The position numbers and the translations under genes were made by a program. A stretch of 36,518 bases of DNA. Source: Octopus bimaculoides. Its lineage: Eukaryota. Under the pieces are notes generated by a model. It made no database searches, had not been told where the DNA came from, and saw only the letters and a program-made list of their open reading frames with translations. Positions 342-35,654 of this stretch are shown piece after piece. The DNA is taken from assembly GCF_001194135.2 (NCBI RefSeq), contig NC_069000.1:40969214-41005731 (forward strand). Direction: 5' to 3'. Positions within the stretch are counted from its first letter, which is position 1, and the number at the start of each line of letters is the position of its first letter.

Positions 342-517
342 GTAAGTAGTTTATCGATTACTTTTTATTTAAAAGAATTAACCACAATTAGCAAGTTGGT
401 TATATTTTGTCCTGAGCATTTAAAATGTGCAACTTATTTATAAATCCTTTCATACCTACCTACAAACATACATAAATACATACGAACACACATTCCCCCT
501 CAAATATGCATACGCAC

Positions 518-563
<46 letters not shown>

Positions 564-3391: not shown

Positions 3392-3429
<38 letters not shown>

Positions 3430-7109: not shown

Positions 7110-7183
<74 letters not shown>

Positions 7184-7741: not shown

Positions 7742-7782
<41 letters not shown>

Positions 7783-10700: not shown

Positions 10701-13137
10701 TCACCCGAAAAGCAAACTTCAATTCATAGTTCTCGTGTTCCAGATAAAAGATGCTTGAATCTATTTGGTAATTTAAAGACGATTTTGCAGAATTTTCTAG
10801 CAGTTCAAGTGGCAACACAGAGACTCCTTCGTGAGCTCTAAATTCACCCACAAAGTGGATGAGAGGAAGATGAACTCTGAGTTGCACAATTTTTGTGCAT
10901 TGTCACCTACATTTCATGATGTATGAGGTGGTATCGAAAGGTTCCTAAACGCCCTGTGTCCAATAAAAATAATTTATTCACCAAAATTTTAACATCATCT
11001 CCTTCGAAATAGTTACCTTGCGCAGCAAAACACCGGTCCCAGTGTTCCTGCCACTTATGGAATCTGGCCTAGAAGTCGTTCTTCGCAATCGAGTCGAGGG
11101 CCTTCTGCGATTCGCTCTGGATTTTGATAACAGAGTTAAAACGCGACATTTGAGGTGAATTTTCATATTCGGGGGAAAAGATGTAAATCCACAGGTCCTA
11201 AAATTTTATGAATATTGTGAGGAGAGCCCGGCGACTGGGTGCACTCTCCGCGTGAAGGATCCAATTCTTCGCACTTTCACCGAATTTCCTCCCTCAGACG
11301 CTTCAAAATGTCGCAGTAGAACTCCCAATTAACAGTATGGCTCTGGGGGACGAATTCTCGATGCACAATTCCACATTTCCGAGGGTGACGCTTGTGACAG
11401 GACTTCCAAATCACTCATCGTCTTCCAGGGACGATTTTCCGCTTTTGAAGCACCACTCGAAACATTGCGTATGACCCATCGCCTCGTCACCGTAAACTTG
11501 CTGAAGCATGCTCAATGTCTTTGTAGCAGATTTCTCAAGTTCAACGCAAAATTATTTAAAGTTGGCTCTTTGTTTCTGTCCATGACATCATGCATACGAT
11601 CACAAAATCACAAATTTTACACTTGCGAAATAAACACAGTAATGTCACTCGACACACTGCCCCATGAAGGTACTGCTAGCTCTCACTGCGTACGCAACCG
11701 TGTGTAGTGCTCTCACCAAATTCAGAAATTAATCGCAACACCTACGCACACCATGGTTCACTTCTTCAATTAGATCTTACGTAATCCTTATTCATGTACA
11801 TTTTTTTACTAACATTATTCATAAATCGTAATTCTCATATATATAACAGACTATAATGGTAATAGTAATAACATAAGTAACTAGTTAAATTGAAGTTTTA
11901 AATAATAAAAATATCGTTCATTCTGTCTACATGTAATTACGTCTACTGTTTCATGTGATTAAAGTGAACATTTCCACAGAGAACAATAGAATTCAAAGTA
12001 AACGCGTTATAGAATTACATTAAAATTTTTTTTTAAATTAAGGTCAAATTTTCTTGCTATGTTAATGAGATTGCACAGACGTAGACAGGCATATAAGCTT
12101 CATCTCCTTTCACAGTGACAGCCAGTGCGGTTCTCAAGTATCACACCATCTGTAGCGATACAAGTGTTTTCTGATGTCTTACGGAATGTATTAAAGTGGT
12201 CTAGGTTAAAGATGCGTCCCTTCCGTTTTGCTCGATTTTTCGAGAGTAATTCGGAAAAGCTTTTGACGAGTTTGTAATTAGAAAGCAAGTTTCTTACTTG
12301 TGCTTTACAGCTGGTCTTGTAGTTTATGTTATAGAATATTTTCCAGTTTAGGATGTTAGGATGATGTATTCTCATTCGTGTAATTTGGATTATATTAGTT
12401 ATGTTATGTTGTAATATTTGATTGCTGAAAGTTTGTACAATTATGTTATTGAATATATTTTCTGCAGTATTTATCACATCATTTGCACTGCCGATGCCTT
12501 TCTGTATATTTCTATCTTATATTTGTCTACACTGACTAGAATGCACTGTTTCTATGTAATAGGGTTGTCTCGTCCTGCAACGGGGTAGATGTGTTATGAT
12601 TGATCATATTTTCATAAAATTTGAGATCGATGCTTGGGTTGAACTGATTAGTAGTAAAGTGTATATTTCAGCATGTGTGTGAGTATTTGAATTTGAGAGC
12701 CGTCTCTTTTCGAATGAATATAGAGATAGTCCATCGTTGCAGTAGTTTTTATTAGCATTATTGAAATATTGTTGTTATTGTTATAAACTTCCTTTTTTTT
12801 TCTTCACTATTTTCGTTAAGCTTTCTGCTATATGTTTATTTATTTCGACATTTATTTTCCTTTTCTTTCTAGGCCCGAAGTCAGTTGCTCTAGTATAACG
12901 CAGATAGATTTTTGTACGTATGCCGGAGTCAGTAATGTATGGACTCCTTTTCAAGCATCTTTCTCTCAGTGTGACAAAATTAAAATAGAGTACCGTACAT
13001 GCCAGTCAACAAAACTAGATTTATGTCCTTGTGAAGGAGATCCATTTAAGATACAAAGTTGCCCGGGACAAATGATCACACCTGACGGCATCGAAATATT
13101 TATATATGATCAAATGTTTGGAGGTGTGATGTTATAA
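323..13137 (+). CDS. Gene A: animal heme peroxidase-family protein (5'-partial), predicted catalytically inactive, with C-terminal TSP1-like module. Exons 323-341, 1140-1243, 2679-2774, 3161-3217, 5528-5972, 7527-7721, 9574-9734, 10257-10356, 12873-13137
   Basis: Manual splicing at AG/GT sites gives one open frame (1442 nt) with peroxidase landmarks: EVCCD, CMPYFR, NDVTHVIDAS, ENPLLMAIYHVFLREYNK, FQHITYNEYLPMLLG, DFLSGMFTE, EGDRFYYEN, QLAEIRKVTMAQLLCRN. Exon phases match paralogue B. Confidence 0.92.
1140..1243 (+). CDS. Gene A exon, SCLGIATNDPHDGRNCSPCMPYFRPLLTNNISCEG
   Basis: tttcag| ... G|gtaagt, 104 nt. Matches the peroxidase C..I...DP....CM.Y.R segment and gene B 28789-28898. Confidence 0.9.
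2679..2774 (+). CDS. Gene A exon, Ca2+-loop region GINHGINDVTHVIDASFMFHDTHLETNLMNAD
   Basis: ctgtacag| ... G|gtgagt, 96 nt. Matches the N.xTSxxDAS motif. Confidence 0.9.
3161..3217 (+). CDS. Gene A exon, GKFNLNSGFLPQAGNKFKGG
   Basis: atttcag| ... G|gtaaga, 57 nt. Same length as gene B 27731-27787 (GKFDLTTGFLSKTGVKFSGG). Confidence 0.88.
3350..3454. repeat. (GT)n microsatellite
   Basis: Seen directly. Confidence 0.95.
3560..4560 (+). mobile_element. Decayed Penelope-like retroelement, C-terminal part (IWF..PF..segment and GIY-YIG endonuclease)
   Basis: Broken frames read ETIWFIVPFAKQIKGNLVGNLYKLFSKHF, YIGATQNYIK and FIWDLKDK...VEWEIISK...CFLCLEE...LVN. These follow the order of PLE motifs (IWFNPP..K..KTNIG, YIG.TE..FK.R, W.I......C.LCL.EK). 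Stops and frameshifts are present. Confidence 0.75.
5528..5972 (+). CDS. Gene A large exon (proximal helix region)
   Basis: ttctag| ... AA|gtatgt, 445 nt. Overlaps ORF 5560..6018 and encodes VGDTISENPLL...HVFLREYNK...FQHITYNEYLP...SFSLAYELVVASMLRE. Confidence 0.93.
6300..6527 (-). repeat. Octopus-type SINE-like interspersed repeat (family 1, head GGCGGCGAGCT..)
   Basis: Shares AAGTCGATT.ATCGACC.CAGTG.ATAACTGGTACTTATTTAATCGA core with copies at 19300, 20225, 21713 and 35795. Confidence 0.8.
6560..7186 (+). mobile_element. Possible non-autonomous Helentron-associated (HINE/DINE-like) element ending in (CA)n
   Basis: Contains 'ccaaaattcattaaaatctgttggatgatgtgggaggagtt' followed by (CA)n, a layout I associate with such elements. 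No protein evidence. Confidence 0.3.
7113..7186. repeat. (CA)n microsatellite
   Basis: Seen directly. Confidence 0.95.
7527..7721 (+). CDS. Gene A exon, NKIPCAFRNNCNFSDVVATVTQDTRFYGIPPYIVWL...
   Basis: tttcag| ... AT|gtgagt, 195 nt. Not in the ORF track. Aligns with the DLxxxNxQRxRDHGLPxY segment and gene B 24746-24940. Confidence 0.9.
9574..9734 (+). CDS. Gene A exon, SVFDVDFLSGMFTE...EGDRFYYENVNEFQS
   Basis: ttgcag| ... A|gtaagc, 161 nt. Contains the GDRFYYE motif. Confidence 0.92.
10257..10356 (+). CDS. Gene A exon, NQLAEIRKVTMAQLLCRNVVNLDQVKQFAFNKTS
   Basis: tttcag| ... TC|gtgagt, 100 nt. Contains the QL.EI.K.....LLC.N motif. Confidence 0.92.
10922..11748 (-). mobile_element. Internally deleted mariner (Tc1/mariner) element
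   Basis: The minus strand reads CVELEKSATKTLSMLQQVYG..QCFEW..SLEDDE, then jumps to GIVHREFVPQSHTVNWEFYCDILKRLRE and ends KWQEHWDRCFAAQGNYFEGD. One end is TATGAGGTGGTATCGAAAGGTTCC at 10922. The other TIR is degenerate near 11748. Confidence 0.88.
12873..13137 (+). CDS. Gene A last coding exon: end of peroxidase domain plus TSP1-like Cys-rich module
   Basis: ttctag|G CCC GAA... ending in TAA. Overlaps ORF 12832..13137. All Cys align with gene B's last exon. Confidence 0.88.
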
Positions 13138-16930: not shown

Positions 16931-17273
16931 TTATTTATTGGTCATTTCCTCAAATAGAAATTGCGCTCTTTCCATGAGCTTCTCGTAGTTATCCTTATAC
17001 GCCAGAGATTGCGCATCATTTCCCATCCTCATCTCTAAGAATCGATAGATGAGCTGCATTTCAGGAGTTGTAATTTGATTTGGGCAGCTCTCTATTTTAA
17101 ACGGACTACCAATGCAAGGACATGCATCTACTCTGCTTGACTGACATTTCCGGGCTTGTATCTGGAAAAATCTACATGTACCAGGAGCGATTCTAAAAGC
17201 AGTCCAAGTCGAAGCAACACCATGATACTTACAAAAATCTATTTCGGGTATTGTAGAACAATCGACATCACCC
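16931..17273 (-). CDS. Gene B last coding exon: end of peroxidase domain, TSP1-like module and helical tail
   Basis: ttctag|G GGT GAT... ending in TAA. Overlaps ORF 16931..17308. Confidence 0.9.
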
Positions 17274-19454
17274 CTAGAAACAATAAAAATGACAATAAAT
17301 AAATGCACAGTGTAAAGATAAACAATAATGAAAAAACGCTAGAAGAAATGAGAAGTAAAGATTAAGAATGATAAAAACAGCAACTACAATAATTGCGACT
17401 AGAAGAAACATAAATAATTCACTTGCTTGTTCTTATTAAAGTATACGCACGTATACACATACAGAGCTATGCAAAAGCACAACTACACATTTCTATTATT
17501 CAATTCAACCCGGACACAGTTCACAAATTACATGTAAAAACATGATCAACGATGAAACATCTAAACCCCGGAGGACATGACAGTAACTTTATTATATGGA
17601 AACAGTTAATTCCAGTCAGTGTAGACAAATATAAATAACAAATATACAGAATGGTATCGGCAATAAAAATGATGTCATACATACTACAAAGTATACATAC
17701 AATAAAATAATGTAGAAATTTTCAACAATTATATATTACAACGTAGCATAAGCAATAATCTAAATTACACGAATGAAATTGTCCGTCGGATAGAAGACAG
17801 GAACAACACCGAATACATCATACAAACACATACAACAGAAATAAACTGGAAAATATTTGTTTATAACATAGAATGCGAGACAAACTATAAAATACAAAAT
17901 AAACTATTAACATCAATTACTCTAAGGCCGGCTACAACATACCATATATGTGAAAAATAATAAATTCCAGACTCACATTCTCATAGCAAATTTGTCAAAT
18001 ACTTCTTAATTGTTTTCGAAAAACCGCACAAATTGCAAGAAACGCATCTATATCGCATAGAGCCCCGTCAATGTGACCGGTGTAGTAGGTGATGACCGGC
18101 TTGTACTGAGCGGAAGATCGTAGCTTAAATGAGTGTCAGTAATGTGGCTGTTATCACATTAACGTAACATCGGAATTTGACCTTAAAATCTATTTTACAT
18201 TGTTCGATGGCTGCTATGCTGTGCACCAATTTGAAGGGTTTAATCTAAGTAATCAACCTCGGAACTTACAAGAATTCTACGTTCACATGAATTCATTGCA
18301 CTGGAATGGTTGAATAGTACGTAATTTCCGATATATAATATGCATGAAATTTGAGCATAATTGTCTGTATAATTTTATTTCAGAGAATAATTAAGGAAAC
18401 AAGAGATTAAAAATAATCATTATTGCTTATAATGATGAAGTGAATACTCACGAAGCCAATTCAAAAGCTTTTTCTTTTACTTTATCTAAGTTGTCTATGT
18501 TACGACACAAGAGAAGAGCCATAGATGTTTTTTTTATCTCTGCAAGTTGGTCTGAAATACGAAATGAAAGAAAATAAAGGTTAAAAGAAATTGTAGAACA
18601 TCGAATTACAAAGAACAAAAATTAAAAAAAAAGCTACAGTGTATTTCATATCATTATAGAATACAAAAATATTATATACAAAAATGAAACAAAAACCAAA
18701 AAGAAAACTTGGAAAGACAAGTGGCAAAGTTTATTGCCGAATCAAATTGTTTTTTACCCCAGTTCCTGCAATTTCAAACAAAACAACGACGATACTAGTT
18801 TAGCAGTATTAAAACTCTTTCTATTTTATTTAATCAAACAAAATCGTTTATATTCATATCTAATATCTAATGTATATGTTACTTTCTCTTACGTTCTGGA
18901 ATCAAGCCTTGCCTGAATCCATTATTCCATCTATGCTCTAAAAAACAAAGAAAATTGAATGCATGTACGAAGATCAGATCATTCAACTACGAACCCCATC
19001 TCTGTAAATATGTCACCTTATCTTCTACCGAAACCCTGGAAATGTTTAAGTAGAAGTTAATAATCCTTTCAACTGTGGACACAAGACTTGGCATTTTGGG
19101 AGGCAAGAAAATATTCAACATAACTTGTTCACTATTATTCTCCCCTCTCTCTTACTCTTCCAAATACAAGCAAACACATGGACACACGCGAAAACATGCT
19201 TTCTTCCCACCCGCATCGAATCTTTCCAACGTTGAAATATCTTTGCAAGGAGGAGATACCACCAAGTAAATTGCAATATACAACAGCAACAATAATAAAG
19301 GCTTCAAATTTTGCCACAAGGGCAGCTTGCGGGAGGTGGGGATGAGTCGATTACATCGACCCCCAGTGTTCAACTGGTACTTATTTAATCGATCCCGAAA
19401 TGTTCAAAGCAAAGTCGACTTCGGCAGAATCTGAACTCAGTTCGCCGCCTTAAT

Positions 19455-19655: not shown

Positions 19656-22600
19656 TTTTGTGGGACTTTCCTATTCGAACGGACAAGATATTAGACTTAA
19701 TTCAAATTTCGCCTAAATCAGCTTCGCCTTTTATCCTTTCGGGGTCAATAAAATAGGTATCAGTTGAACACTGGGTATAATTGACTTACCCTCTACTCGC
19801 AGATTTGAGGCTTTGTGCCTATAGTAGATATTGTAACGTAGTTAGTCGTCGCCAATTATAGTAGTATAGCCACTATTGATGACGATGCTTGTTTACACTA
19901 TCACCTGGTAGTAACAATAAAACATATAATGAAGCGGGATACCAATAACCTAGCAATCCAACAAACTCTCCACGTACTATACACAAGCCAACAAGTGGTA
20001 TTCCGACAAACTGCCGAAACGACACCTAACGACTTCCGGTGATTAACGCCTACTCTCTGTATCTCTCACTCAGACCGCTATTGTTTATAGTCGTTCAGTC
20101 AAGTCTATTCTTGCAGCGCATGTCATGATACTCGCCACAGTAGTAGAAAGGATCATTCATATTCTTATTGGTGTTAGAATAGTGGATTGGCAAAGTCTTT
20201 AGAGTATCGAAATTGAGGTATTTATTTCTTCATTGCCTACATAGGCGGAACAAACAAGGACATACAAAGGGATTATGTCGATTTCATCGACCCCAGTGCA
20301 TAACTGGTACTTATTTAATCGATCACGAAAGGATGAAAGGCAAAAGAAATGTAGTCATTCTAGCAATGACCATCGCAACTATTTCGTTAGCTATCGTAAA
20401 CAACGATTTGTGTCATTTAAGTTGGAGTAGTTTGATTTGAGCGAAATACTGCTGCTATTTCTAACAGACCTGTAATCACGTTAGGGATTGTTCGTTGAAT
20501 TGACTCAAACAACATTGGTTCAGTATTCGTGTCAGTATTCGTTTAGTTTTCAGACATTGGACTGTTGGAGCACCGCCTTTAGTCGAACAAATCGATCCTA
20601 GAAATCATTCTTTTTAAGCCTAGTACTTATTCCATCAGTTTTTATGCCGAGCTTCTAGGTGACGGGGATCTAAACACACCAACATCGGTTGTCAAGCGAT
20701 GGTGGGCAGGAGGGGGGAGGGGGAGACCACACACACACATAGGCAACAGGCCTCTTTCAGTTTCCGTCTACCAAATCCACTCACAAGGCTTTGGTCAGCC
20801 CGAGGCTATAGTAGAAGACACTTACCCGAGGTGCCAAACAGTGGGACCATGTAGTTGAGAAGCATGCTTTTTTACCACACAGCCACGCTGCGCTAATCAA
20901 TTTTTTATTCACAATCACAAGATCTTTTGTAGGAGATGAATATAACTGTATGGTAGCCATACACATCACAAGTCTATTTCATTTTCATGTTTAAGGAAGG
21001 TAAAAGATCTAGTAGTGTGATATTAAGTTGTTTATTGCTGGCACTCCGTCGTTTACGACGTCGAGGGTTCCAGTTGATCCGATCAACGGAACAGCCTGCT
21101 CGTGAAATTAACGTGCAAGTGGCTGAGCACTCCACAGACACGTGTACCCTTAACGTAGTTTTCGGGGATATTCAGCGTGACACAGTGTGACAAGGCGGAC
21201 TCATTGAAATACAGGTACAACAGAAACAGGAAGAAAGAGTGAGAGAAAGTCGTGGTGGAAGAGTACAGCAGGGTTCGCCACCATCCCCTGCCGGAGCCTC
21301 GTGGAGCTTTAGGTGTTTTCGCTCAATAAACACTCACAACGCCCGGTCTGGGAATCGAAACCGCGATCCTATGACCACTGCCCTAACCACTGGGTCATTG
21401 CGCCTCCACTAAGTTGTTTATATAAAACTACTAAATATAATTACTTCTTTTCAGTAAAAATTGTGGAAATCTTTTTTTCGTTTCAACGTTTACATGAGGG
21501 TAGATACTACAGCGGGCCAGACTAAATGACCAGCAATATTTCNNNNNNNNNNNNNNNNNNNNNNNNNNNNNNNNNNNNNNNNNNNNNNNNNNNNNNNNNN
21601 NNNNNNNNNNNNNNNNNNNNNNNNNNNNNNNNNNNNNNNNNNNNNNNNNNNNNNNNNNNNNNNNNNNNNNNNNNNNNNNNNNNNNNNNNNNNNNNNNNNN
21701 NNNNNNNNNNNNCGTAGCGGTATTTCGTCTACCGTTTCGTTCTGAGTTCATATTCCGCCGAGGTCAAATGTACCTTTCATCCTGTTGGGGCCGAGTAAAT
21801 AAATACCAGTTATGCATTGGGGTCGATGTAATCGACTTAACCTCTTTGTCCTTGTTCTTCCCCTCTATGTTGGGCAATAAAAAAATAAATTTACTATGAT
21901 CTTTTCAGTTCATATTCTGTCGGGAATCTGTGATTTACCTGTTATCTTCCTGGAATCAATCACAAAAAAAAAAAACAAAAAAAACAACTAATAATATAAT
22001 GCCAACTATAGTATTAGCGACGCATACTTTCGTGGAATGAATATCTACACCAGAAAATGTTAGTGCAACGTAAAAAAAATAAATAAAAAAGAGAAAGACA
22101 AGACGATGACACATGGAGACTAAAATCGAAACGGGATTCTCAAAACGTCTCATTAATACAGGTTTTGTATATATTTGCCCAATGTAATAAATAGCAGTAG
22201 AAAATTAAATAAAGTCAAGCTATAATGATAAATCCTTTTATAACTTACCCGCCAGGAATACGCCGGTATGTTCATAGTAAAATCTGTCAGAGTTTTGTAT
22301 TGAAACGAATTGATCTTTCATAAGTTTCAATAGTGTTTTTCCAGCAGGCTTGTCATTATCGATAATCTCTGTGAACATGCCGCTTAGGAAATCCATGTCA
22401 TAGACGGTACTGTAAAATTGAAACATTCTCATATATATATATATGTGTGTATATATATGTATATATATATATATATATCTGTGTGTGTGTGTGTGTGCGT
22501 GTATATATAAATATATATATATATACATACGTTTTTCGACATAGGTCTTTGTGTTTCTGATGGCTAACTTATATATTTCACACAGCAATCACAACATATA

Positions 22601-23093: not shown

Positions 23094-26000
23094 TGTGTGT
23101 GCAATGGAAGTGGGATGGTGAACAGTCAACACTGAAAAGAAAAATCAGTGTTTCATCTCTGTGTGAGTGTATGTGTGTATGTGTGTGCGTCTACAAGGGA
23201 AGTATGTGAATGTTTGTATGTGTGAACCAGTGTTCTTTCAGTAACAAAGGATGATCGGTGTCACATCTCTAAAGACAACCACTGGACAACATTGACAAGT
23301 GTATTGATTTGATTATTCTAACTGTTTTGTTAAAAATAATTATTACAATCACTCACACCTACAGAAACTCATTAGAGAAAATGATCATTGCCTGAGTGTA
23401 TCAAGAATATAAAACGATTGTAGTTGAAAGGTATATTATAAATTTGGTATTAAAAGAATCATTAAACTAAAAACTTGGTTTTGTACTTTATTTATATATA
23501 AAATACTACAAGTAACCGTCATTTTGGATGGCACGGGGCCAGCTAGTATTACAAATAAGTACTTAAGTGAAATTAACGGTCTTTGTTTCTGAATGGCTAA
23601 CTTATACCGTCCACGCTGCAACCACTTCAGTTTCAGTACATGGAGTAGGGTAGAATGGTGGAAAGGGAGGGGAAATGGCATACAGTAGTGAGTTTATCTG
23701 CCACATGGGGAGGGAGCTGAGTTATAGTTAATTTGGTGAACTCAAGTTTGGGCGGCTTGGACAAGAGTAGAGAACTATCCCCGAAGAAAAGAAGACGAGT
23801 CTGAACCGATACAGTCTTGTATATAACGTCCGTATAACTCCGTAGTCGGTTCAATGAACTGATCACCAAGAAGATTTGAGTTGCAACGTAGCCGATAAAT
23901 AAGATGGAGAGATTGGGAAACATTCCCATTCACACAGAAACCACAAGTATTCGTTGGTAGATCTCGCCCGGAATGAAATGCAGTTAAGTCTGATGTAAGC
24001 TCGGTGAGGCGGAAACGTGTGGGCGTACTAGAATTGAAGATGATCCAACGGTTGAGGAAGTATTCAAGAGCCTAGAGATGCGAAACAAGTAACTATAGGA
24101 ATTAGGGCTTACTTTTTGTTTACGTTAATCGCCCACTCTCTTATAATACACTCTCTGAAGCAGTAAAAAGTTCTTGGCTTATAACGAATTAAGATGGCCG
24201 TATTACATTTGTAGATTTGGCAGCTGTCATTATCAAGAATCATTACAGAACTATTTCACTGACACTGTGGCATGATTGAAATCTTTAATGTTGATTAAAC
24301 GTAGGTTAGACAGCGAAAAAATTTTGTTTTCCCGAAGTGAAAATGCTATTAATGTAAATCCTCTATCTCTTACCTTGATTTAATGATAATTAAGTATAGT
24401 GCCGTTGAGTGGATTAATAATTATTGAGAGCATTTGGATATATATTTTCGCACAGGCGATATAGTCAGATTAATGTATACTCATATCAAATCGATTAGTT
24501 TCGATATGTATGAGTAAAACTAACTGGATGTTTTTACGGCTTAACATCTCTTTCTTATAAATCTTCAATTCTATTTAAAGGCTTCCTTAATCATAGTTTA
24601 AACACAACGGATAGTTGAAATCAGAATTTTTTTTCTCTCAGGAATATAAAAAAAATGTTGGAACTGGTAAGTTACAACAGTTTCACAAGTATTTTTAAAA
24701 AGTATAACGGTTTAAAACATATGAAAAACAACAATTTCCACTCACTTATAAGTCTTCTCAAGCGCAGTTTTGTCCACTGCAGTGTGGAAGGGCAGGTCTC
24801 CAAAAGTTTGGATTTGATTTTCATTCCAGATTGCCAACCAAATAACGTAGGGTGGTATTGCGAGATAACGCGTGTCTTGGGTTAGGACTGACACTATGTC
24901 AGAATATTTGCAATTATCCCGAAAATTACAGGGTATTTTTCTGGAAAAAATAAACAAACAAAAATATCAGAAAAGAAAATAATATATTTGTAAGAATTAA
25001 ATTAGAGACACATAACTTCTATGACTGGTAAGATACCACGCGTTCTGGTGAGACATATAATAATTAAATTTATCTTGGTTTACTGTTTCTTATTTTATCA
25101 CCTCACTAAATGTAACATGTAAAGTTTTCTATGATAGAACGTAAAACGACGTAAACCAACAAAATATTTTGACCAGTGATCGAACCATGATGTCATCCAG
25201 TAACATTATAACAATTTGACAGATAATCAATGAGACACACGCAAAAACGTATACACATACATATTTGTCTACATACACAGACACATGAATTCAAAGTGGT
25301 ATTTATTTAAAAACACCGGTGAAATTAAAGAATTTTAATTCGGAAAATTGGATGTTGGTGAAATAGTATAGATTTACCTGCCGATTTTTAAACTGGCTTC
25401 ATTCAGCATTCCTTCGATGATATTTTTCAACTTGGTTTCATCGTCCACAACTGCTGCGTTGTTCATTAAATCGGTCAAATCTTTATTTTCAGTTGGAGAA
25501 ATTTTTACTGTTTCTCTCAACATTGAAGCCAATACTAATTCATAGGCAAGTGAAAATGAATTAGAAATTATAGGTAAGATCTCGGCTTCGTAAGTACTAG
25601 TTGGTAATTGTTCACCAATCAGCAGTGGTAAATATTCGTTGTAAGTAATATGCTGAAATATTCCAGTCAGCAACTTCTTTGTTGCTTCCAAGGGATTTGC
25701 ATTACCAAATTCAGTCATTTTATCGACAAGTTTATTGTGTTCACGGAGGAAAACATGATATAGTGCCATCACTAAGGGGTTTTCGTTGATTGCATCTGAA
25801 ACTACAAGATAAAGGAGAGATATGTTTTATTAAACACAACATCAATTTTCTTAATGAACCGATATGTATGAGTAAAACTTACTACGTCAAATTTAGCATA
25901 TTAATTACTATTATCTATTCAGTCACAAACGAGTGAAATGCATAAGTGTTCGTCTAACAAATTTTGAATTCAGTTCTGAAAGTAATTAAACGAAAGTAGA

Positions 26001-28044
26001 ATATAAGGGAAAAATCGTTCTGTCTTGACCTTCATAACTCCCGTTCCATTTAGAATATAAACATGTTAATTTCTTCTTTCATCAAGTTCTATAGTGATTT
26101 ATCGAAATGTTGTGGACAAATGGTGATGTTGATGAGTATCAGTTGCAAAAAAATAAATAAATAAATAAAATAACTACGATCAAAAATCGAACCTGGGCTA
26201 TACATAACAATTTATGTCTACAGGGATCACTGCAACGACTTGGCCTATATTGTGCTTCGTGTAGCTTTCAGAACCAACTGTGTTCTAATTCATTGATTTA
26301 GTAAAGACTAGATAATTGATAAGAGATGGTATAAACATACCATTAACAAGAGCATTATCAAGTTAATCAAAGAAAATTGGCTATAAATTGGAACTGAATC
26401 CCACTTTCGAGACGCCACTTTTCATTTAAAGACGAACAATATAAATGATTAAAGAACGAAATCACTGTTTTACGTAGAAGAATAGGCTCGTAGCCTGTTT
26501 TAATATTATGGGCAAACTGCGAACTAGCTACCTTCATGATCATCACCAAGGTCAGGAAATCAGCAGACGAACATACAGATGAAAGAAAAGTGGGTATTAG
26601 GATGCACCAAACAACTTTTGGTGAAAAAGGCTTTAATATTTGGAGTAGAAAAATATGGCTTCATTACAGAAAAGCGTTTTATTCAGTCATGGCTATAGAT
26701 TGCAAAAATATCTGCTGTTTTAGATACTGCCACAGAAAGTCTCACGAAGACCTTGTCCACATTCCTCACTCTTATAAATGAAACTGAAATGATTATGTGT
26801 GATGTTATAAATATTTCAATGAGAATATTTCAAGGCAATTGTATGTGCATCTATTTATTTTCTTGGCCTTATATCTACGATATCATTTTTGTTACGAAAA
26901 GCCAATGGCTATATAGTAGTGTAAGAGACATTGATATGATACGTAAGTTCTCTGTGAAAGATCTAAAAGTCTATGCCTGAAACTCTTACGATACTGAAAA
27001 CAGCCGCATATAAACATGTAATCTACTGGTATAGGAAGAGCGTTCAGCCGAAAGAAGGGTTTATATTTAACAACTGAACGTAGAAAATCTACTTTCCAAA
27101 CCCAAAATGCTTGCATCAGTTGTCTCTCTATCTCGCTTATTCTACGAAACAAGTATAGAAAATAACAAGATATCCTAGATATTGTTGAAAATATATCGTA
27201 TAAAGATACTGTGAAAACGTTAGAGTAACCCACACGCTACAGTAACATCAAATAAATATTCAAAATAATGAACAGAGATCAAGGTCAATCTTTGCCAAGC
27301 GACTTCACTCTGAATGCTTTAGCTTTGTTACTATGGCAATAGTCCGGATACTTATTGATCAGATTGCGTATATGTATATGTGAGTATGTCTGCATGCCTG
27401 TATATGTGTGTGTCCCTGCGTGATTATCTCCCACCATCGCTTCACAACCAGTGTTGGTGTGTTTGCGTCTCTGTAACCTAGCAGTTTTGCAAAGGAGCCC
27501 GATAGAATGCGTACCACACAAGCAAAACAACTACTAGGCTCAATCAGCTGGACTAAAATTTTTCCAGATGTTGCTCTTTTACTTGTTTTAGTTTAATGTC
27601 TGAAACAAGTAAAAGATAAAATACATACATACATACATACATACACGCACACACGCACACGCACACACACACGCACACACACACATATATAGACTTGACA
27701 ATGACAATAATCTAATAGTTAATAACCTACCTCCGGAAAATTTGACGCCTGTTTTTGAAAGAAATCCTGTAGTGAGGTCAAACTTGCCTGAAATTTGAAA
27801 GTAGAAAAGTAAGTATGAATACCAAGTTGGGTAAAATAATTGGACACCTTTCATATATTATTTCCATAGTGCGTAATGAGAGTGAAGAAGTCTTGGATCC
27901 AGTCACCCTTGAGTATATTCATGTGGAAAACTTCAAATCAATAGTGCAAGCTTTTGAATTGACCGTCTGTTATATTGATATTACAACAATCACACCTATC
28001 TCCATTGATATCCGTGTACATATACGCTTGGTAATAAGAAATTT

Positions 28045-28113: not shown

Positions 28114-31100
28114 AAGGTAGATATCTAGATAGATAGATACATCGATTTATTTACATGGGCCTTTGTAATCAATGGAAAATGCTGTTACTTACCGTTAGTT
28201 AAAGTGCCGCTAAAATCAGTTGAAGAATACAATAAAGAAAGATCAAGTGGGGCAGTAACATCATTTTTGCCTTGATTATTAGCTTTTTAAAAGATAGAAA
28301 AGATGGAAAAATAAGAAAATGTGACAATAAAATAATAACATTACGAAATTATTTCCGTATAATGAAAGAGTAAGTTTCCATTAACTTTTGACAGTTATCG
28401 ATAGAAATTTAAAATATTGTGAATTTTATAATGAGGTTAAATTTCTAAAGTTACTTGGATGTTCAAAGTACTGTTTCCAGCACAAAACAAGCCATATGCA
28501 TTTATAGTTGGGGTCATTTATCAAAAGAATATCAACTTTGCACACCGATAGATAACTGATTCTGGTTAATTATGAACAACTGTTATCGCATTTAGGTAGA
28601 AAGATTTGTTCTTATTTATCTATTTATCTATTCCAGAAGAACTAAACCTTTGCATGAGCCCACGTGTGAGCTCATAGCAAAGTTTTCTATGGCAAGTTTT
28701 AATGAATTTAATTCAATGTTCAGCTATCTTTGTCATTACATTTGAAATAATTTTATAAATAAAAGAAAGGAAGCTTTTAAATTATTACCCGTGCACTTGA
28801 GATCATATTCTAGAATTGGTTTTTTGTATGGCATACACTTAGCGCAGCCATTTGTAACACGTTCATCAGTTGCCGCATTGGTATCAATACCTAGACAACT
28901 GAAATATTCAAAGAAAACGTTATAAAAAGTTTGAAATATTTAAGAATAATTTTTTTAGCGGAATGTGTTTTGGATATTGCTAGACCAGAACTTCGATCTG
29001 AAAGTCTAGTTGCATTTACTTTTGAAAGCATGCTTTTGATCAGTCTAATGTAAGTAAAATGAGAGACAGCAATTAACCATATTGAACAAAACTAATGTAA
29101 TTCTCTAAAAAAAGTGTTTTTATTGACACAAATAGAAAAGAAATCAATATGGAAAGATGAAACAGTAAAAACTGTATAACAGAAGATATACAATAAAATG
29201 TAAGCAGCCAGTGTGTCAAATCTACTTCGTGACTTCGATTCCTAACTGTAAACTTACACTTCAGTTACGTTGCCGTGTCGGATTTCTTCTCCTCAACAAT
29301 AAATATAAGGTTCATGCTATGTTACAAAAAGCCAATATTTGAACCAAAGCCAAAAAATCTCTGTTGTTCTTTTAGTGTTTATTGAATGGCAGATGTATAT
29401 GATTATATTTTCACTTAGCACAGATATAGTATACGTGAGTAATAAACAGAAAATTTTGGCGCTCATTAAGCAAAATCAGTATTAATAAAATAGCTCATGA
29501 TTACTTTTGATTCTAAATGCTCATATGTTTCTTTAATAAAATCTGAAGAGTCTGAATTTATTTACAGTGAAGATAACCGAATAATTAGAAAAATATCACG
29601 TCTCCACTTCATTTTCTTGCCTGCATATAACGGTATTCAAATAGTTTATAAGCGATCTGAAGAGATATTTAATGTATCAATTGGATTATGTATTTTCGTG
29701 CTGCTTTACCATTTCTTTCATATTTTCTAGAATGCGCAATCTTTAGCGGTAGCTACATTTTTCTCAACAAACCTGAAATCTCACCTCTTAATCTGGTAAT
29801 GCTTACCACATATGAAAATGGAAACTCATTTTAACAACTTACAGAGCACTTTCTGTAGGATTGGAATTATAATTGATTGCAAAATGATATGTCATTCATT
29901 GGTCACAGACAAATATATCTGATTCTGTAAGAAATTGGACATAAAACGTAAATGGGTAACACTAAATAATTGTAAGACATTTAACTACACTATTTACTTT
30001 CCTATGCATTCCTACCGCCATTTTTACAATAACATCAAATAAAGAACTCCACGTTCAACACACACAATATATTCCCGTTACGTTAACAGAGTATTAAAAA
30101 AATTACAAAGGCAAAACCAGAAATCTTTTCTTAGGAATTGACAAATACCTTGAGAGTAGAACTTGATTGACTGGACTAAAAATCTCATGTATAAATAGCT
30201 AAGCAATTATTGTCTCTTGCTCAATAATCGTGGATAAAAGACCATATGCTCGCGGTGAAGCAAATGAAAAATTTGGATAAAACAAGTCGCAGACTATAAA
30301 TTAAAAATACAAAAATCTTGTGTAATTATGTTGGATAAAGATTAGGACGGTGAGGTTTCAAAGCATAAAGCATTTCTGCAAACATATAAAAAAAAGGTTT
30401 GGGATGTTACCCACTACAATTTGTAACTTAAAATCTAGACTTATTTATGGATGTATTTGGAGTGCTGATTCCAAAACTGGTATTGAGTTTTCTCTACAAC
30501 CTCTTACTAAATAATTAGCAGTTATTTTGATAAAAATATAATAATATTTTGTGCCATAGAAATAAACTGCATTCTGATATATGTTATTTTTCAGTTCAAG
30601 ATCTTAAGTTGAACTACATTAACATTTATAGTATTGGGTTGGTGCATAATTATTGCGGCTTTTTTTTTCAACAAATTGTATTCAACAAAAACAATAACAG
30701 CATGTAACAAAAACATCTTTAAATGATTAATCCGGAGCATATTCACCACCTACTTCAATTACTGCTTCCCATTTGTTTGGCAGACGGTTAGACCGTCATT
30801 TAAATATGTTTTTGTTAAATGTTGTTATTGTTTTTGTTGAAGAAAATTTATTGAAATAAAGCCGCAATAATTATGCACCGACCCAATAATTGTAACAAAG
30901 CAATAAAGATAGAATATACAACGATCACTCTAAAATATATTCTTTCTAAAGTTTCTTATAAGTTTATAGGTCAGTTTTCCCGAAGTATCCTTCAATAACC
31001 TATCACCATGTGTGTATCTCGTTTTCCCTGTTTTCCATTGCTTTTCCTTGCTCTTTGATTAAATCATCTGTTTAAGGGACTGTGGAGATAATAAACAATG

Positions 31101-32958: not shown

Positions 32959-33021
<63 letters not shown>

Positions 33022-34544
33022 TACACATACATACACCACCCACACACACACATATATATGTGTGTATCTGCATGTGTGGGTGTTTGTGTGTATAATATGT
33101 ATATATTATGCATGTATGTAGGTAAGTACGTGGGTATTTTGAGCATGAAAAGATTGATGAATAAGATGCACATTTTGAGGTTTTGAATTGTTAGAACGAA
33201 ATATATTTTTTTGATCTTATTCTACTCAATTGATTACTAAATATGAAAAGGAAAAAAAGAATATGTTAATTACTTTCCGCAGCACTCTTCATCTGAAAAA
33301 GAAGAGAAGAAATTATTAACACTTCAAAATTAGTTTTGCATTAGTTTTATTAATATTTCTAGGATAAAAGGAAAGAGCTTAAATCCGTACTAAAATGTAA
33401 TGACCTAGTTTATAATTTTCAAGTGCTACTATAGATTACAGTGTTTATTGTTCTTTCCCGTGTTTAGTATTTCCAAATTGATGAACTGGGCATTTCTCAT
33501 TTTAAATCTCACGACCATCGCTACTGCATAGTAAATTCGTGACACAAATCATCACCTTATCAGTTGTTTGGAAGCATATTCACTTAACTATCCGGTATTT
33601 CAGCTGTTTCTTTCTATTATCGAAATATTAGAAAAAGCTTTGAATTGAGTGACAGAAACACACTTTTGTTATTTCTTAAACTTAAACTATGATAAGAATA
33701 GAAACGCAATATTATTATGAAATAAAACTCATCTCATAAATCATATTAATGAAGTGAATGAGATGAAATAAAATTTCAAATTGATTGTAACATATAAAGC
33801 CAGATGAGGATTGTCTACAATCTTTTGAAACTACTCTCAATGTACTAAAATCAAGAGGAATAAGATGCAATATCATTTTATAAAAGAATGACAAGCAAAT
33901 GAGAAATACTAGGATCTCACCAATTATAAGCGAGAGTTTCCCATAAACTCTACCATAAAAAGCGAGAGTTTCCCATATGACGGGTTAGAAGAATGTTAAA
34001 AATACGTGCAGTATTCTTGAGCGGAATATTATTTTAGGGAATGTTCTAGTATATCAGTTTGCTTAGTTAAACACATCAGATTTGTCTTAGAATCATTTGA
34101 TAAATAAATATCAGTTTCTTAGATAATTACAATATGTTCCAGATGTATACGGGAAGACAATAGATTAACGTTGAGTTCACGCCTTTTTCAAACGCATTTG
34201 TCATGCAAGTGAATATCAACAACTGAAAATTGAAACTGGGTCGTAGAATAGGTTTCACGGAAGTATATCCCTCTCTTAAATATTGTTTTATTAAAACTGA
34301 TCTAACACTTTTTCTAGCAGGTGTAGAAGTAATGATTCAAAACTAAGAACAAGTGTCTAACTATTTACATGAAAATAGTAATTATCATACTATGTCAATA
34401 TGAAAATAATATTTCTTTGTTAGGAAAGCTAGTACTGCAAGAAAATTACTGATTAATAATTACATCAGTGTTGACCAATACAAGAGTACATGCATACACG
34501 TATATATACAGAAATATGAAATATATACATATACATATACAAAT

Positions 34545-34579
<35 letters not shown>

Positions 34580-35654
34580 NNNNNNNNNNNNNNNNNNNNN
34601 NNNNNNNNNNNNNNNNNNNNNNNNNNNNNNNNNNNNNNNNNNNNNNNNNNNNNNNNNNNNNNNNNNNNNNNNNNNNNNNNNNNNNNNNNNNNNNNNNNNN
34701 NNNNNNNNNNNNNNNNNNNNNNNNNNNNNNNNNNNNNNNNNNNNNNNNNNNNNNNNNNNNNNNNNNNNNNNNNNNNNNNNNNNNNNNNNNNNNNNNNNNN
34801 NNNNNNNNNNNNNNNNNNNNNNNNNNNNNNNNNNNNNNNNNNNNNNNNNNNNNNNNNNNNNNNNNNNNNNNNNNNNNNNNNNNNNNNNNNNNNNNNNNNN
34901 NNNNNNNNNNNNNNNNNNNNNNNNNNNNNNNNNNNNNNNNNNNNNNNNNNNNNNNNNNNNNNNNNNNNNNNNNNNNNNNNNNNNNNNNNNNNNNNNNNNN
35001 NNNNNNNNNNNNNNNNNNNNNNNNNNNNNNNNNNNNNNNNNNNNNNNNNNNNNNNNNNNNNNNNNNNNNNNNNNNNNNNNNNNNNNNNNNNNNNNNNNNN
35101 NNNNNNNNNNNNNNNNNNNNNNNNNNNNNNNNNNNNNNNNNNNNNNNNNNNNNNNNNNNNNNNNNNNNNNNNNNNNNNNNNNNNNNNNNNNNNNNNNNNN
35201 NNNNNNNNNNNNNNNNNNNNNNNNNNNNNNNNNNNNNNNNNNNNNNNNNNNNNNNNNNNNNNNNNNNNNNNNNNNNNNNNGTGTGTGTGTGTGTGTCTGT
35301 GTGTCTGTGTGTCTGTGTATGTGTGTGTGCAATGAGAGAGAGAGAGAGACAGAAAGGAGGAAGCTGGTTAAAACGAATTGAAGAAAGGAAATAAGGAAGG
35401 AAGAAAGACAAACAGAAAATCGAATAGGGAAGAAAGAAGTTAAAAAAAAAAGGATGATATTTTGCGATGCTTACCTGTAGTTCCTCTGCTAGTGCGAAAC
35501 ATATCAAACTTAAGGAGTTTTCCGAAAAGTGCAAAAAGGTGTGTTTTATCAGATAGTGTGCCATCGTGACAAGGGAACACGTCAGTGCTTACTTTCCTAG
35601 GTAAAGGTAATTTGACTCCGTAAAAACTCATGTATGGAACGTCCCCGGAACCAC
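16931..35654 (-). CDS. Gene B: animal heme peroxidase-family protein (5'-partial), predicted catalytically inactive, paralogue of gene A. Exons 35654-35475, 33292-33274, 28898-28789, 28282-28193, 27787-27731, 25801-25378, 24940-24746, 22409-22249, 18551-18452, 17273-16931
   Basis: Manual splicing gives one open frame (1679 nt) with GT-AG introns. Exons of 19, 57, 195, 161 and 100 nt equal the gene A lengths. Landmarks include LPLPRKVS, EECC, CMPY, HVFLREHNK, FQHITYNEYLP and SDRFYYE. Confidence 0.92.
18452..18551 (-). CDS. Gene B exon, DQLAEIKKTSMALLLCRNIDNLDKVKEKAFELAS
   Basis: tttcag| ... TC|gtgagt, 100 nt. Homologous to gene A 10257-10356 and not in the ORF track. Confidence 0.92.
19300..19449 (-). 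repeat. SINE-like repeat family 1, internally deleted copy
   Basis: Same core as 6300-6527 and ends in CGCCGCC. Confidence 0.75.
19604..19654. repeat. (AAT)n microsatellite
   Basis: Seen directly. Confidence 0.95.
20225..20344 (-). repeat. SINE-like repeat family 1 fragment
   Basis: CATCGACCCCAGTGCATAACTGGTACTTATTTAATCGA core. Confidence 0.75.
20540..20893 (-). repeat. SINE family 2, near full length with degenerate tRNA-like head
   Basis: The minus strand starts GCGCAGCGTGGCTGTGTGGTAA..GGCACCTCGGGTAAGTGTCTTC. The body matches 15592-15790. Confidence 0.75.
21030..21409 (-). repeat. tRNA-derived SINE (family 3)
   Basis: The minus-strand head GTGGAGGCGCAATGACCCAGTGGTTAGGGCAG..GGTTTCGATTCCCAGACC has A-box and B-box-like motifs, followed by about 300 nt of non-tRNA body. 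Confidence 0.75.
21543..21712. other. Assembly gap (N run)
   Basis: N bases. Confidence 1.
21713..21875 (+). repeat. SINE-like repeat family 1 copy (gap-truncated), opposite orientation to 19300 and 20225
   Basis: Reverse complement of the family 1 core: ACCAGTTATGCATTGGGGTCGATGTAATCGACTTAA. Confidence 0.78.
22249..22409 (-). CDS. Gene B exon, TVYDMDFLSGMFTE...SDRFYYEHTGVFLA
   Basis: ttacag| ... G|gtaagt, 161 nt. Lies within ORF 22238..22588. Confidence 0.92.
22617..23051. other. Assembly gap (N run)
   Basis: N bases. Confidence 1.
23610..24070 (-). mobile_element. Decayed Penelope-like reverse transcriptase core fragment
   Basis: The minus strand reads STPTRFRLTEL.., MGMFPNLSILFIGYVATQIF, RSYTDVI, PPKLEFT, DKLTTV and LPYS. 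These are collinear with PLE RT motifs (L.RLAELVL, MGPSYA.LF.GYVE.QIF, RYIDD, HP.L.FT, SIPYSQ). Confidence 0.65.
24746..24940 (-). CDS. Gene B exon, RKIPCNFRDNCKYSDIVSVLTQDTRYLAIPPY...
   Basis: ttccag| ... AA|gtgagt, 195 nt. Overlaps ORF 24742..24957. Confidence 0.92.
25378..25801 (-). CDS. Gene B large exon (proximal helix region)
   Basis: ttgtag| ... AG|gtaaat, 424 nt. Overlaps ORF 25374..25772. 47 of the first 63 residues are identical to gene A (counted by hand). Confidence 0.93.
27405..27545 (+). repeat. SINE family 2 fragment, opposite orientation to 20540-20893
   Basis: CCACCATCGCTT.ACAACC.GTGTTGGTGTGTTT.CGTC..CGTAAC.TAGC.GTT..GCAAA.GAG.CCGATAGAAT..GTAC is the reverse complement of the family 2 body. 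Confidence 0.7.
27731..27787 (-). CDS. Gene B exon, GKFDLTTGFLSKTGVKFSGG
   Basis: atttcag| ... G|gtaggt, 57 nt. Lies within ORF 27588..27854. Confidence 0.88.
28046..28112. repeat. (AGAT)n microsatellite
   Basis: Seen directly. Confidence 0.95.
28193..28282 (-). CDS. Gene B exon, ANNQGKNDVTAPLDLSLLYSSTDFSGTLTN (Ca2+ loop)
   Basis: aaaag| ... G|gtaagt, 90 nt. Homologous to gene A 2679-2774. Confidence 0.87.
28789..28898 (-). CDS. Gene B exon, CLGIDTNAATDERVTNGCAKCMPYKKPILEYDLKCT
   Basis: tttcag| ... G|gtaata, 110 nt. Homologous to gene A 1140-1243. Confidence 0.9.
30632..30888. mobile_element. Mariner-derived MITE with about 95-nt inverted arms and TA ends
   Basis: TATTGGGTTGGTGCATAATTATTGCGGCTTT ... 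AAAGCCGCAATAATTATGCACCGACCCAATA, resembling the Hsmar1/MADE1 TIR. The spacer encodes NRLPNKWEAVIEVGGEY on the minus strand, like a mariner transposase C-terminus. Confidence 0.92.
32772..32958. other. Assembly gap (N run)
   Basis: N bases. Confidence 1.
33274..33292 (-). CDS. Gene B microexon (19 nt), DEECCG(N)
   Basis: ttctcttctttttcag|ATGAAGAGTGCTGCGGAAA|gtaatt. Its phase joins 35475 to 28898 in frame. Confidence 0.85.
34580..35280. other. Assembly gap (N run)
   Basis: N bases. Confidence 1.
35475..35654 (-). CDS. Gene B exon with distal-helix region GSGDVPYMSFYGVKLPLPRKVSTDVFPCHDGTLSDKTHLFALFGKLLKFDMFRTSRGTT
   Basis: ccttttag| ... G|gtaagc, 180 nt. Overlaps ORF 35440..35631 and matches LPxPRxVS...WGQFLDHD of the family. 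Confidence 0.88.

What the first reader, a model, noticed from the sequence alone, without database searches (positions are those of the whole stretch)
35475..35654. Distal catalytic triad absent in gene B (WGQxxDHD to FGKLLKFD)
Seen: THLFALFGKLLKFDMFRT sits after LPLPRKVS. Established: this helix normally carries Gln91, Asp94 (heme ester) and His95 (acid-base catalyst). Here they are Lys, Lys and Phe, while Asp96 is kept. Two Lys and a Phe at former pocket positions may form a new, differently charged binding site (inference). The matching gene A exon lies upstream of the window.
Basis: partly seen in the sequence, partly recalled or inferred. Interest (0 to 1): 0.7.

Follow-up and report, generated by a model that had tools for sequence, protein, structure and literature searches.

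The report
Heme-less, fast-evolving octopus peroxidase-like gene
This exon belongs to an Octopus bimaculoides gene for a peroxidase-shaped protein that has lost every residue needed to hold and use heme, so it is a non-catalytic "dead enzyme", and it is changing unusually fast between octopus species.

Summary
Window 35475-35654 (minus strand) is a real, correctly bounded exon of an Octopus bimaculoides gene, "peroxidase mlt-7", XP_014782529.1. It encodes LPLPRKVS...THLFALFGKLLKFDMFRT. Aligned to lactoperoxidase, the distal Gln, Asp and His are Lys, Lys and Phe, and the calcium-binding Asp is kept.

The loss goes well beyond the distal helix. The catalytic Arg, the proximal His, its Asn partner and a nearby Arg are also gone. 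The same is true of gene A's O. sinensis orthologue and of every member of an octopod-only clade (Octopus and Argonauta).

The calcium site and all cysteines are invariant, so these are heme-less pseudo-peroxidases, not broken genes. Gene A is under purifying selection (dN/dS 0.24). Gene B evolves very fast (dN/dS 1.18). Its exons diverge three times faster than its introns, with 17 of 17 Cys conserved and the reading frame intact. That indicates diversifying selection.

Those three positions vary among orthologues and paralogues (K/T/R, K/M, F/A).

The likely role is a secreted binding or recognition protein. Tissue and partner are unknown.

The parts
35475..35654 (-). Gene B exon named in the finding. 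It encodes GGSGDVPY-MSFYGVKLPLPRKVS...FGKLLKFD...RGTT. The annotated start ATG is at 35631. Homology to full-length paralogues continues up to the acceptor at 35654.
35503..35526 (-). Codons for FGKLLKFD, the former distal helix. Lys 35520-35518 sits at the Gln91 position, Lys 35511-35509 at Asp94, Phe 35508-35506 at His95, and the retained Asp 35505-35503 at the Ca-binding Asp96.
33274..33292 (-). Gene B 19-nt micro-exon, ag|ATGAAGAGTGCTGCGGAAA|gt, encoding (D)EECCG(N).
28789..28898 (-). Gene B exon 3.
28193..28282 (-). Gene B exon 4. It carries the retained calcium-site motif T-A-P-L-D-L-S at 28256-28236.
27731..27787 (-). Gene B exon 5.
25378..25801 (-). Gene B exon 6. Ala 25793-25791 replaces the catalytic Arg239, Glu 25784-25782 is retained at the Glu242 position, and Ala 25529-25527 replaces the proximal His336.
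24746..24940 (-). Gene B exon 7. Leu 24885-24883 replaces Asn421 and Asp 24876-24874 replaces Arg424.
22249..22409 (-). Gene B exon 8, containing the GDRFYYE-type motif region.
18452..18551 (-). Gene B exon 9.
16931..17273 (-). Gene B last exon, including the stop codon. It encodes a Cys-rich module that is tentatively TSR-like, followed by a helical tail.
323..13137 (+). Gene A, the convergent paralogue, with nine in-window exons: 323-341, 1140-1243, 2679-2774, 3161-3217, 5528-5972, 7527-7721, 9574-9734, 10257-10356 and 12873-13137. All have AG/GT splice sites and the frame is intact. Its distal-helix exon lies just upstream of position 1.

Best explanation
Gene B, and its convergent neighbour gene A, belong to an octopod-specific clade of stand-alone peroxidase-fold proteins that no longer bind or use heme. 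Full-length paralogues carry a signal peptide, so secretion is inferred. After duplication from catalytic molluscan peroxidases, the clade replaced every residue that ligates heme or drives compound I formation. The distal Gln/Asp/His became K/K/F in gene B, Arg239 became Ala, the proximal His became Ala, Asn421 became Leu and Arg424 became Asp. The clade kept the structural calcium site, the helical core, all cysteines and a C-terminal Cys-rich module with a helical tail. These proteins therefore cannot act as heme peroxidases. That part follows from established knowledge of the family and is shown at the sequence level. I infer that they work as extracellular binding or structural proteins that use the peroxidase fold as a scaffold. 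Gene A is held by purifying selection. Gene B is being remodelled quickly by diversifying selection on a fixed disulfide and calcium framework, which is the pattern expected for a protein that tracks a changing partner, such as gamete, pathogen or prey recognition. They are not a conserved new site.
For: Identity and fold: P0001 is reproduced exactly from the window and matches An_peroxidase at E=6e-58. Its best solved relatives are lactoperoxidase and myeloperoxidase.

Residue losses: shown by the alignments to LPO and to canonical peroxidases.

Conservation in the clade: Gly90, Asp96, Thr168, Asp172 and Ser174 are invariant. His336 is Ala in 10 of 11 sequences. Arg424 is Asp in 10 of 10. Positions 91, 94, 95 and 239 vary.

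Phylogeny: the heme-less clade, including Argonauta, is monophyletic. Its sister is an O. sinensis paralogue that still has the distal His, Arg, Glu and proximal His.

Gene A is functional: dN/dS is 0.24 over 427 codons with 92% aa identity. The exons are intact, and exon K of 0.055 is below intron K of 0.081.

Gene B is functional and fast-evolving:
- dN 0.269, dS 0.228, omega 1.18, bootstrap interval 0.88-1.64.
- Exon K of 0.248 against intron K of 0.084.
- 59.7% aa identity to the O. vulgaris orthologue with 17 of 17 Cys conserved.
- A neutral simulation expects 8.4 stop codons, with P(no stop)=0.0002.
- All splice sites are GT-AG.
- Orthology is supported by the conserved convergent arrangement with gene A and by a paralogue dS of 0.92.

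Secretion: full-length paralogues start with MRxxVALxxTGI.... A homologous, phase-compatible exon lies 5.5 kb upstream of the finding exon.
Against: There is no expression, heme-binding or activity data. No transcript-derived copy of the protein appears in the searched collections. The annotated model is N-terminally truncated, and the usual 'CNN' exon was not found, although assembly gaps are present. The omega interval includes 1. The selection estimates are pairwise Nei-Gojobori values, and intron K comes only from alignable stretches. The binding or recognition role is an inference from architecture and evolutionary rate, not from any direct evidence. The structure model is poor (mean pLDDT 60.5), so nothing can be said about whether a cavity persists.
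Confidence: 0.75

Rival explanations
1. One reading: the former heme pocket of gene B has been rebuilt into a new, positively charged ligand site (Lys, Lys, Phe) that binds anions, phenolics or melanin precursors.
For: The three residues are present as stated. The closest catalytic relative on the same chromosome is the type found as an abundant ink peroxidase, so a link to melanin chemistry is conceivable. Diversifying selection in gene B could in principle act on a ligand site.
Against: The three positions are not conserved among orthologues or paralogues (K/T/R, K/M, F/A) and have average column entropy. The O. sinensis and O. vulgaris orthologues of gene B have Thr at the first position. 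The heme-less paralogues were not found by name or accession in the searchable (partly truncated) supplements of the O. vulgaris ink proteome paper. No reliable model of the pocket could be made.
Confidence: 0.1
2. Gene B is a decaying or nearly neutral gene (relaxed constraint or an incipient pseudogene), and the odd residues are just drift.
For: Omega is about 1.2 and its interval includes 1. There is no transcript-level evidence in the collections searched. The N-terminal 'CNN' exon was not found.
Against: The reading frame is intact in three species, although the neutral expectation is 8.4 stop codons (P=0.0002). All ten exons keep GT-AG splice sites. All 17 Cys and all calcium-site residues are conserved. 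Exons diverge three times faster than introns, whereas neutrality predicts equal rates.
Confidence: 0.07
3. The excess exon divergence of gene B comes from exon-limited gene conversion by a paralogue in one lineage, not from positive selection.
For: The genes sit in a cluster of paralogues on one chromosome. Conversion tracts between old paralogues would be confined to exons, where similarity remains.
Against: No paralogue found is close to O. bimaculoides gene B. The best are 52-55% identical, lower than the 59.7% identity to the orthologue. The searches returned no nearer O. bimaculoides copy. Divergence is spread over all exons.
Confidence: 0.05
4. The proteins still bind heme or another cofactor through non-canonical ligands and keep some redox activity.
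For: Glu at the Glu242 position is kept in gene B. The fold and the calcium site are intact. A conserved Tyr lies five residues before the former proximal His.
Against: The distal His, catalytic Arg, proximal His, Asn421 and Arg424 are all replaced. The retained Glu is itself Lys in the O. sinensis orthologue and in paralogues.
Confidence: 0.03

Closest known systems
Peroxidase-homology domain of dual oxidases (mammalian DUOX1/2, C. elegans BLI-3)
   Same: It is an extracellular An_peroxidase-fold domain that lacks amino acids critical for heme binding and activity (PMC6411640). DUOX1 chains appear among the sequence and fold matches.
   Different: The DUOX domain is fused to a membrane NADPH oxidase. 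The octopus proteins are stand-alone, apparently secreted, carry a C-terminal Cys-rich module, are tandemly duplicated, and one of them evolves under diversifying selection. The loss of heme residues is independent.
Human peroxidasin-like protein PXDNL (from my own knowledge, not tested here)
   Same: It is a paralogue of a catalytic animal peroxidase that is reported to lack peroxidase activity because conserved active-site residues are substituted.
   Different: PXDNL keeps the LRR, Ig and vWC architecture of peroxidasin. It is not closely related to the molluscan clade.
Catalytic cephalopod peroxidases with a TSR-like tail: O. bimaculoides 'heme peroxidase 2' (P0172) and the O. vulgaris ink-proteome 'chorion peroxidase-like' A0A7E6FFI6
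   Same: Same chromosome. Same overall layout of a peroxidase domain followed by a short Cys-rich C-terminal module. They are the nearest catalytic-looking relatives.
   Different: They keep GQFLNHD, GDxRxN, FRFGH and LNIQRGRD. One of this type is abundant in ink. Genes A and B have none of these motifs.
MLT-7 and insect chorion peroxidase (Pxt), the names NCBI gives these octopus genes
   Same: They belong to the same Pfam family, PF03098.
   Different: MLT-7 and chorion peroxidase are active cross-linking enzymes (PMC6411640; PMC8976471). The octopus proteins lack the catalytic residues, so the names should not be read as function.
Peroxinectin (crustacean cell-adhesion peroxidase; from my own knowledge)
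   Same: It is a secreted member of the family whose main described role is adhesion or recognition, not bulk oxidation. This gives a precedent for the fold acting as a binding scaffold.
   Different: Peroxinectin keeps heme and activity and uses an integrin-binding KGD motif. Gene B has no RGD or KGD motif.

Membership tests
Animal haem peroxidase fold (Pfam PF03098, peroxidase-cyclooxygenase superfamily) | Significant match to the family profile over the whole domain | tested here: met
   E=6.1e-58 and 197 bits against a cut-off of 25, covering residues 5-434. The best solved relatives are LPO and MPO.
Catalytically competent animal heme peroxidase | Distal His (MPO His95 / LPO His109) | tested here: not met
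   Phe in gene B and in the other Octopus clade members whose N-terminal region is available, Ala in Argonauta.
Catalytically competent animal heme peroxidase | Distal Gln91 and heme-ester Asp94 | tested here: not met
   Lys and Lys in gene B. The positions read K/T/R and K/M across the clade.
Catalytically competent animal heme peroxidase | Catalytic Arg239 | tested here: not met
   Ala in gene B. This is a highly variable column in the clade, reading A/P/T/D/S.
Catalytically competent animal heme peroxidase | Heme-ester Glu242 | tested here: inconclusive
   Glu is kept in gene B (E151), but it is Lys in the O. sinensis orthologue and in some paralogues. The alignment could shift by one position.
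Catalytically competent animal heme peroxidase | Proximal His336 with its Asn421 partner | tested here: not met
   His is replaced by Ala (10 of 11 clade sequences; Asp in one). Asn is replaced by Leu, Val or Ser. The neighbouring Arg424 is Asp in all.
Catalytically competent animal heme peroxidase | Structural calcium site (Asp96, Thr168, Asp172, Ser174) | tested here: met
   All four side-chain ligands are invariant in the clade.
Catalytically competent animal heme peroxidase | Bound heme and H2O2-dependent activity | not testable with these tools
   This needs purified protein.
Functional pseudoenzyme (non-catalytic homologue kept by selection) | Evidence of selection maintaining the gene after catalytic loss | tested here: met
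   Gene A has omega 0.24. Gene B keeps an intact frame (P=0.0002 under neutrality), has 17 of 17 Cys conserved, and its exons diverge faster than its introns. The clade is shared by Octopus and Argonauta.
Thrombospondin type-1 repeat (Pfam TSP_1) for the C-terminal module | Profile match, or a significant fold match to TSR domains | tested here: inconclusive
   The gene B and Argonauta tails give no Pfam hit. Catalytic relatives give sub-threshold TSP_1 hits of 17-18 bits against a cut-off of 21.6. An AlphaFold2 model of the tail has pLDDT 83.5. Its best fold matches are properdin, F-spondin TSR and C9, but only at E=0.25-0.6.

The most novel reading that the evidence does not exclude
Gene B is a secreted recognition protein built on a dead peroxidase scaffold and caught in an evolutionary arms race, for example gamete recognition, pathogen binding or a salivary/venom component. 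The selected sites would lie around the mouth of the emptied heme cavity.
Probability: 0.3. Interest if true: 0.6.

Novelty: new variant of a known kind. Interest (0 to 1): 0.4.

Why it matters
Peroxidase-fold domains without heme are already known (DUOX, PXDNL), so the loss of catalytic residues is not surprising in itself. Three things appear to be undescribed in the papers I could search:

- An octopod-wide clade of stand-alone, probably secreted, heme-less peroxidase-like genes.
- A living intermediate paralogue that still has the distal His, Arg, Glu and proximal His.
- Two adjacent members under opposite regimes, one conserved and one with exons diverging three times faster than its introns.

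On the practical side, the database names "peroxidase mlt-7" and "chorion peroxidase-like" should not be taken as enzymatic function when octopus transcriptomes are interpreted. For research, gene B is a tractable candidate for studying how a dead enzyme scaffold is reused for fast-evolving recognition in cephalopods.

Tried and rejected
- **O. maya primers.** The qPCR primers for O. maya 'chorion peroxidase' (PMC8976471) do not match the window with up to 3 mismatches. That oviducal-gland transcript is therefore not shown to be gene A or B.
- **Literature.** Searches by gene name, by accession, and for octopus peroxidase residues, pseudoenzymes or salivary gland found no description of these genes. 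The O. vulgaris ink proteome supplements list only the catalytic relative. The supplement for the P. digueti salivary-gland 'Peroxidase-like protein' holds no sequence.
- **Whole-protein structure.** AlphaFold2 with a 10-sequence alignment gave mean pLDDT 60.5 and below 50 for the distal region. It was not used for any statement about the pocket. Foldseek on that model only confirms the MPO/LPO fold at a low TM-score.
- **C-terminal tail.** Pfam gave no hit and the fold search was not significant. The tail is called TSR-like only tentatively.
- **Look-ups that failed.** P0004 (O. vulgaris) is not on record for a locus look-up. The O. sinensis cluster member P0174 was used in its place.
- **Gene A's upstream exon.** The O. 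bimaculoides gene A exon upstream of the window could not be retrieved. The fetched loci do not reach it, so the O. sinensis orthologue was used.
- **The 'CNN' exon.** The N-terminal 'CNN' exon of gene B was not found in the 9 kb upstream. Assembly gaps there leave the question open.
- **Other checks.** No tRNA-like genes are present in the window. There are no integrin-type RGD or KGD motifs outside the conserved GDRF motif.
Full report
**What is in the sequence**

The window is AT-rich animal DNA with microsatellites and six runs of N. It is 100% identical to chromosome CM046620.1 of the Octopus bimaculoides assembly GCA_001194135.2.

The minus strand of 35475-35654 translates to GGSGDVPYMSFYGVKLPLPRKVSTDVFPCHDGTLSDKTHLFALFGKLLKFDMFRTSRGTTG. 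It has a ttttag acceptor and a gtaagc donor exactly at the reported ends.

A homology search returned the annotated product, "peroxidase mlt-7" (XP_014782529.1, P0001, 551 aa), and only a handful of relatives, all from octopods. I rebuilt its coding sequence from the window as ten exons, all GT-AG, and it translates to P0001 exactly. One of the ten is a 19-nt micro-exon at 33292-33274. P0001 matches Pfam An_peroxidase at E=6e-58.

The exon and the peptide are therefore real.

**The residues**

HMMER aligns the helix to lactoperoxidase as LLFMQWGQIVDHDL against HLFALFGKLLKFDM. MAFFT alignments to canonical peroxidases agree. In myeloperoxidase numbering, gene B reads:

| Position | Role | Gene B |
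|---|---|---|
| Gln91 | distal | Lys |
| Asp94 | heme ester | Lys |
| His95 | distal catalyst | Phe |
| Asp96 | calcium site | Asp (kept) |
| Arg239 | catalytic | Ala |
| Glu242 | heme ester | Glu (kept) |
| His336 | proximal ligand | Ala |
| Asn421 | partner of proximal His | Leu |
| Arg424 | neighbouring Arg | Asp |
| Thr168, Asp172, Ser174 | calcium site | kept |

In fact the whole heme-handling apparatus is missing.

**It is a family trait, not a gene B oddity**

Gene A lies on the plus strand, convergent with gene B. Nine of its exons are in the window, all with AG/GT splice sites and an intact frame.

Its O. sinensis orthologue (P0003, XP_036366593.1) reads FGKLLMFD. Other members read:

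- FGRLLKFD in the O. sinensis paralogue P0002.
- FGTLLKFD in gene B's orthologues in O. vulgaris and O. sinensis.
- FGKLLMAD in three Argonauta hians proteins.

An exhaustive profile search found 6813 family members. Only a few close relatives stand apart from the canonical mass. The named ones are all octopod.

Lined up, the sequences look like a degeneration series:

1. Canonical enzymes have GQFLDHD, GDxRxNE, FRFGH and LNIQRGRDHG.
2. The O. bimaculoides "heme peroxidase 2" type has GQFLNHD.
3. An O. sinensis paralogue (XP_029647656.2) has GLFLMHD but still carries Arg, Glu and the proximal His.
4. The clade containing genes A and B has none of these.

A neighbour-joining tree places the heme-less sequences, Argonauta included, in one group, with the His-retaining paralogue as sister. 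This is a quick distance tree without support values.

**Are the genes alive?**

I fetched the O. sinensis loci (L002 and L004). The convergent A/B arrangement is conserved there.

| Measure (O. bimaculoides vs O. sinensis) | Gene A | Gene B |
|---|---|---|
| Codons compared | 427 | 395 |
| dS | 0.152 | 0.228 |
| dN | 0.037 | 0.269 |
| dN/dS | 0.24 | 1.18 (bootstrap 0.88-1.64) |
| Amino-acid identity | 92% | 60% |
| Exon divergence K | 0.055 | 0.248 |
| Intron divergence K | 0.081 | 0.084 |

Gene B's last exon, measured separately, gives omega 1.5.

This is not simply a comparison of paralogues. The dS between A and B within O. bimaculoides is 0.92, far above the 0.23 seen between the gene B copies.

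Gene B's exons diverge three times faster than its own introns, while gene A shows the normal pattern of exons slower than introns. All 17 cysteines are conserved between the O. bimaculoides and O. vulgaris proteins at 59.7% identity. A simulation that places the observed number of substitutions at random expects 8.4 stop codons, and none occurred in only 0.02% of runs.

Together these results argue for diversifying selection on a fixed disulfide and calcium framework, and against decay.

There are caveats. These are pairwise Nei-Gojobori estimates. Intron divergence comes only from alignable stretches. The omega interval includes 1.

Within the clade, the calcium ligands and Gly90 are invariant. 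His336 is almost always Ala, and Arg424 is always Asp.

That is what relaxed former active-site positions look like. It is not what a conserved new site looks like.

I could not model the pocket. The whole-protein AlphaFold2 model has mean pLDDT 60.5 and below 50 around the distal helix. No coordinates are available for volume or electrostatics calculations.

**Architecture and likely role**

Full-length paralogues begin with a signal-peptide-like MRxxVALxxTGI segment. A homologous exon lies 5.5 kb upstream of the finding exon, outside the window. Its phase-1 donor fits the phase-1 acceptor at 35654. The annotated gene B product is therefore probably N-terminally truncated, and the protein is probably secreted.

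The last exon encodes a Cys-rich module followed by helices. It models well (pLDDT 83.5). Its best fold matches are thrombospondin-type repeats (properdin, F-spondin, C9), but they are not significant. Catalytic molluscan relatives give sub-threshold Pfam TSP_1 hits in the same place.

From this I infer an extracellular binding or structural role for the family, and a partner-tracking role for gene B. Tissue and partner are unknown.

Two leads from the literature:

- The catalytic relative is an abundant ink protein in O. vulgaris, but the heme-less paralogues are not listed there.
- A 614-aa "Peroxidase-like protein" of unknown identity is highly expressed in the posterior salivary gland of Paroctopus digueti.

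**Comparison with what is known**

The closest known kind is the heme-less peroxidase-homology domain of dual oxidases. A review describes it as lacking critical residues in mammals and in C. elegans BLI-3 (PMC6411640). From my own knowledge, human PXDNL is another example.

The octopus clade shares the fold and the type of loss. It differs in being stand-alone, in being tandemly duplicated on one chromosome, in carrying the C-terminal module, and in the opposite selection regimes of two neighbouring genes.

Tandem clusters of heme peroxidases in cephalopods have been reported (PMC6386654). The passages I read there do not mention loss of catalytic residues. My searches found no paper describing these genes.

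**Verdict**

This is a new variant of a known kind, the pseudo-peroxidase. It is of moderate interest, mainly because gene B's exons outrun its introns.

Noticed in passing
L001 4432-4478 (outside the window, about 5.5 kb upstream of 35654 on the minus strand): A signal-peptide-like exon, (R)LFVALILTGIAVIVQ followed by G|gtaag, is homologous to the N-termini of full-length paralogues and is phase-compatible with the acceptor at 35654. The annotated gene B product XP_014782529.1 therefore looks N-terminally truncated. The usual 'CNN' exon between the two was not found, but the assembly has gaps there.
   Followed up: partly
window 33274-33292 (-) and 323-341 (+): Both paralogues have a conserved 19-nt micro-exon encoding the (D/E)xCC motif. 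tblastn misses them, and the gene models fail without them.
   Followed up: yes
window 16931-35654 compared with L004 and L002: Between O. bimaculoides and O. sinensis, gene B exons diverge about three times faster than gene B introns (K 0.248 against 0.084). Gene A shows the opposite pattern (0.055 against 0.081).
   Followed up: yes
window 13100-13186, next to the N run at 13187-13888: Gene A's reading frame ends 26 codons earlier than in O. sinensis (...ITPDGIEIFIYDQMFGGVML*), right beside an assembly gap. This could be a real truncation of the helical tail or an assembly artefact. Gene A also has an in-frame 9-nt shorter exon at 1140-1243, with one PHD repeat fewer.
   Followed up: partly
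L001 32495-38701 (window about 6931-13137): In GCA_001194135.2, gene A is annotated as part of a 1074-residue An_peroxidase product that runs off the locus. This may be a fusion of gene A with an upstream tandem paralogue. That protein did not appear in the protein searches.
   Followed up: no
P0160 / XP_029647656.2 (O. sinensis, same chromosome as the gene A and B orthologues): This sister paralogue has GLFLMHD and GDDRINE and keeps the proximal His. It is an apparent intermediate that has lost Gln91, Asp94 and Asn421 but kept the distal His, Arg, Glu and proximal His. It would be a useful comparison protein for heme-binding tests.
   Followed up: partly
L003 (CM046620.1 41,080,185-41,114,982, about 75 kb beyond the window end): Two more heme-less paralogues, of 401 aa and 414 aa (P0012-like and P0008), lie in divergent orientation. 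The family therefore forms a cluster on this chromosome.
   Followed up: partly
window about 10910-11551 (-), inside a gene A intron: A degraded mariner/Mos1-type transposon remnant. Pfam gives HTH_48 at E=2e-5 and a partial Transposase_1 match at E=7e-4, and the frames are broken.
   Followed up: partly
window 6377-6527, 19306-19439, 20278-20344, 35795-35996: Copies of a dispersed repeat of about 130-165 bp, 74-82% identical to each other, possibly a SINE. ARAGORN finds no tRNA-like gene in the window.
   Followed up: partly
PMC12607849 (Paroctopus digueti): A 614-aa 'Peroxidase-like protein' is reported as highly expressed in the posterior salivary (venom) gland.
   Followed up: partly
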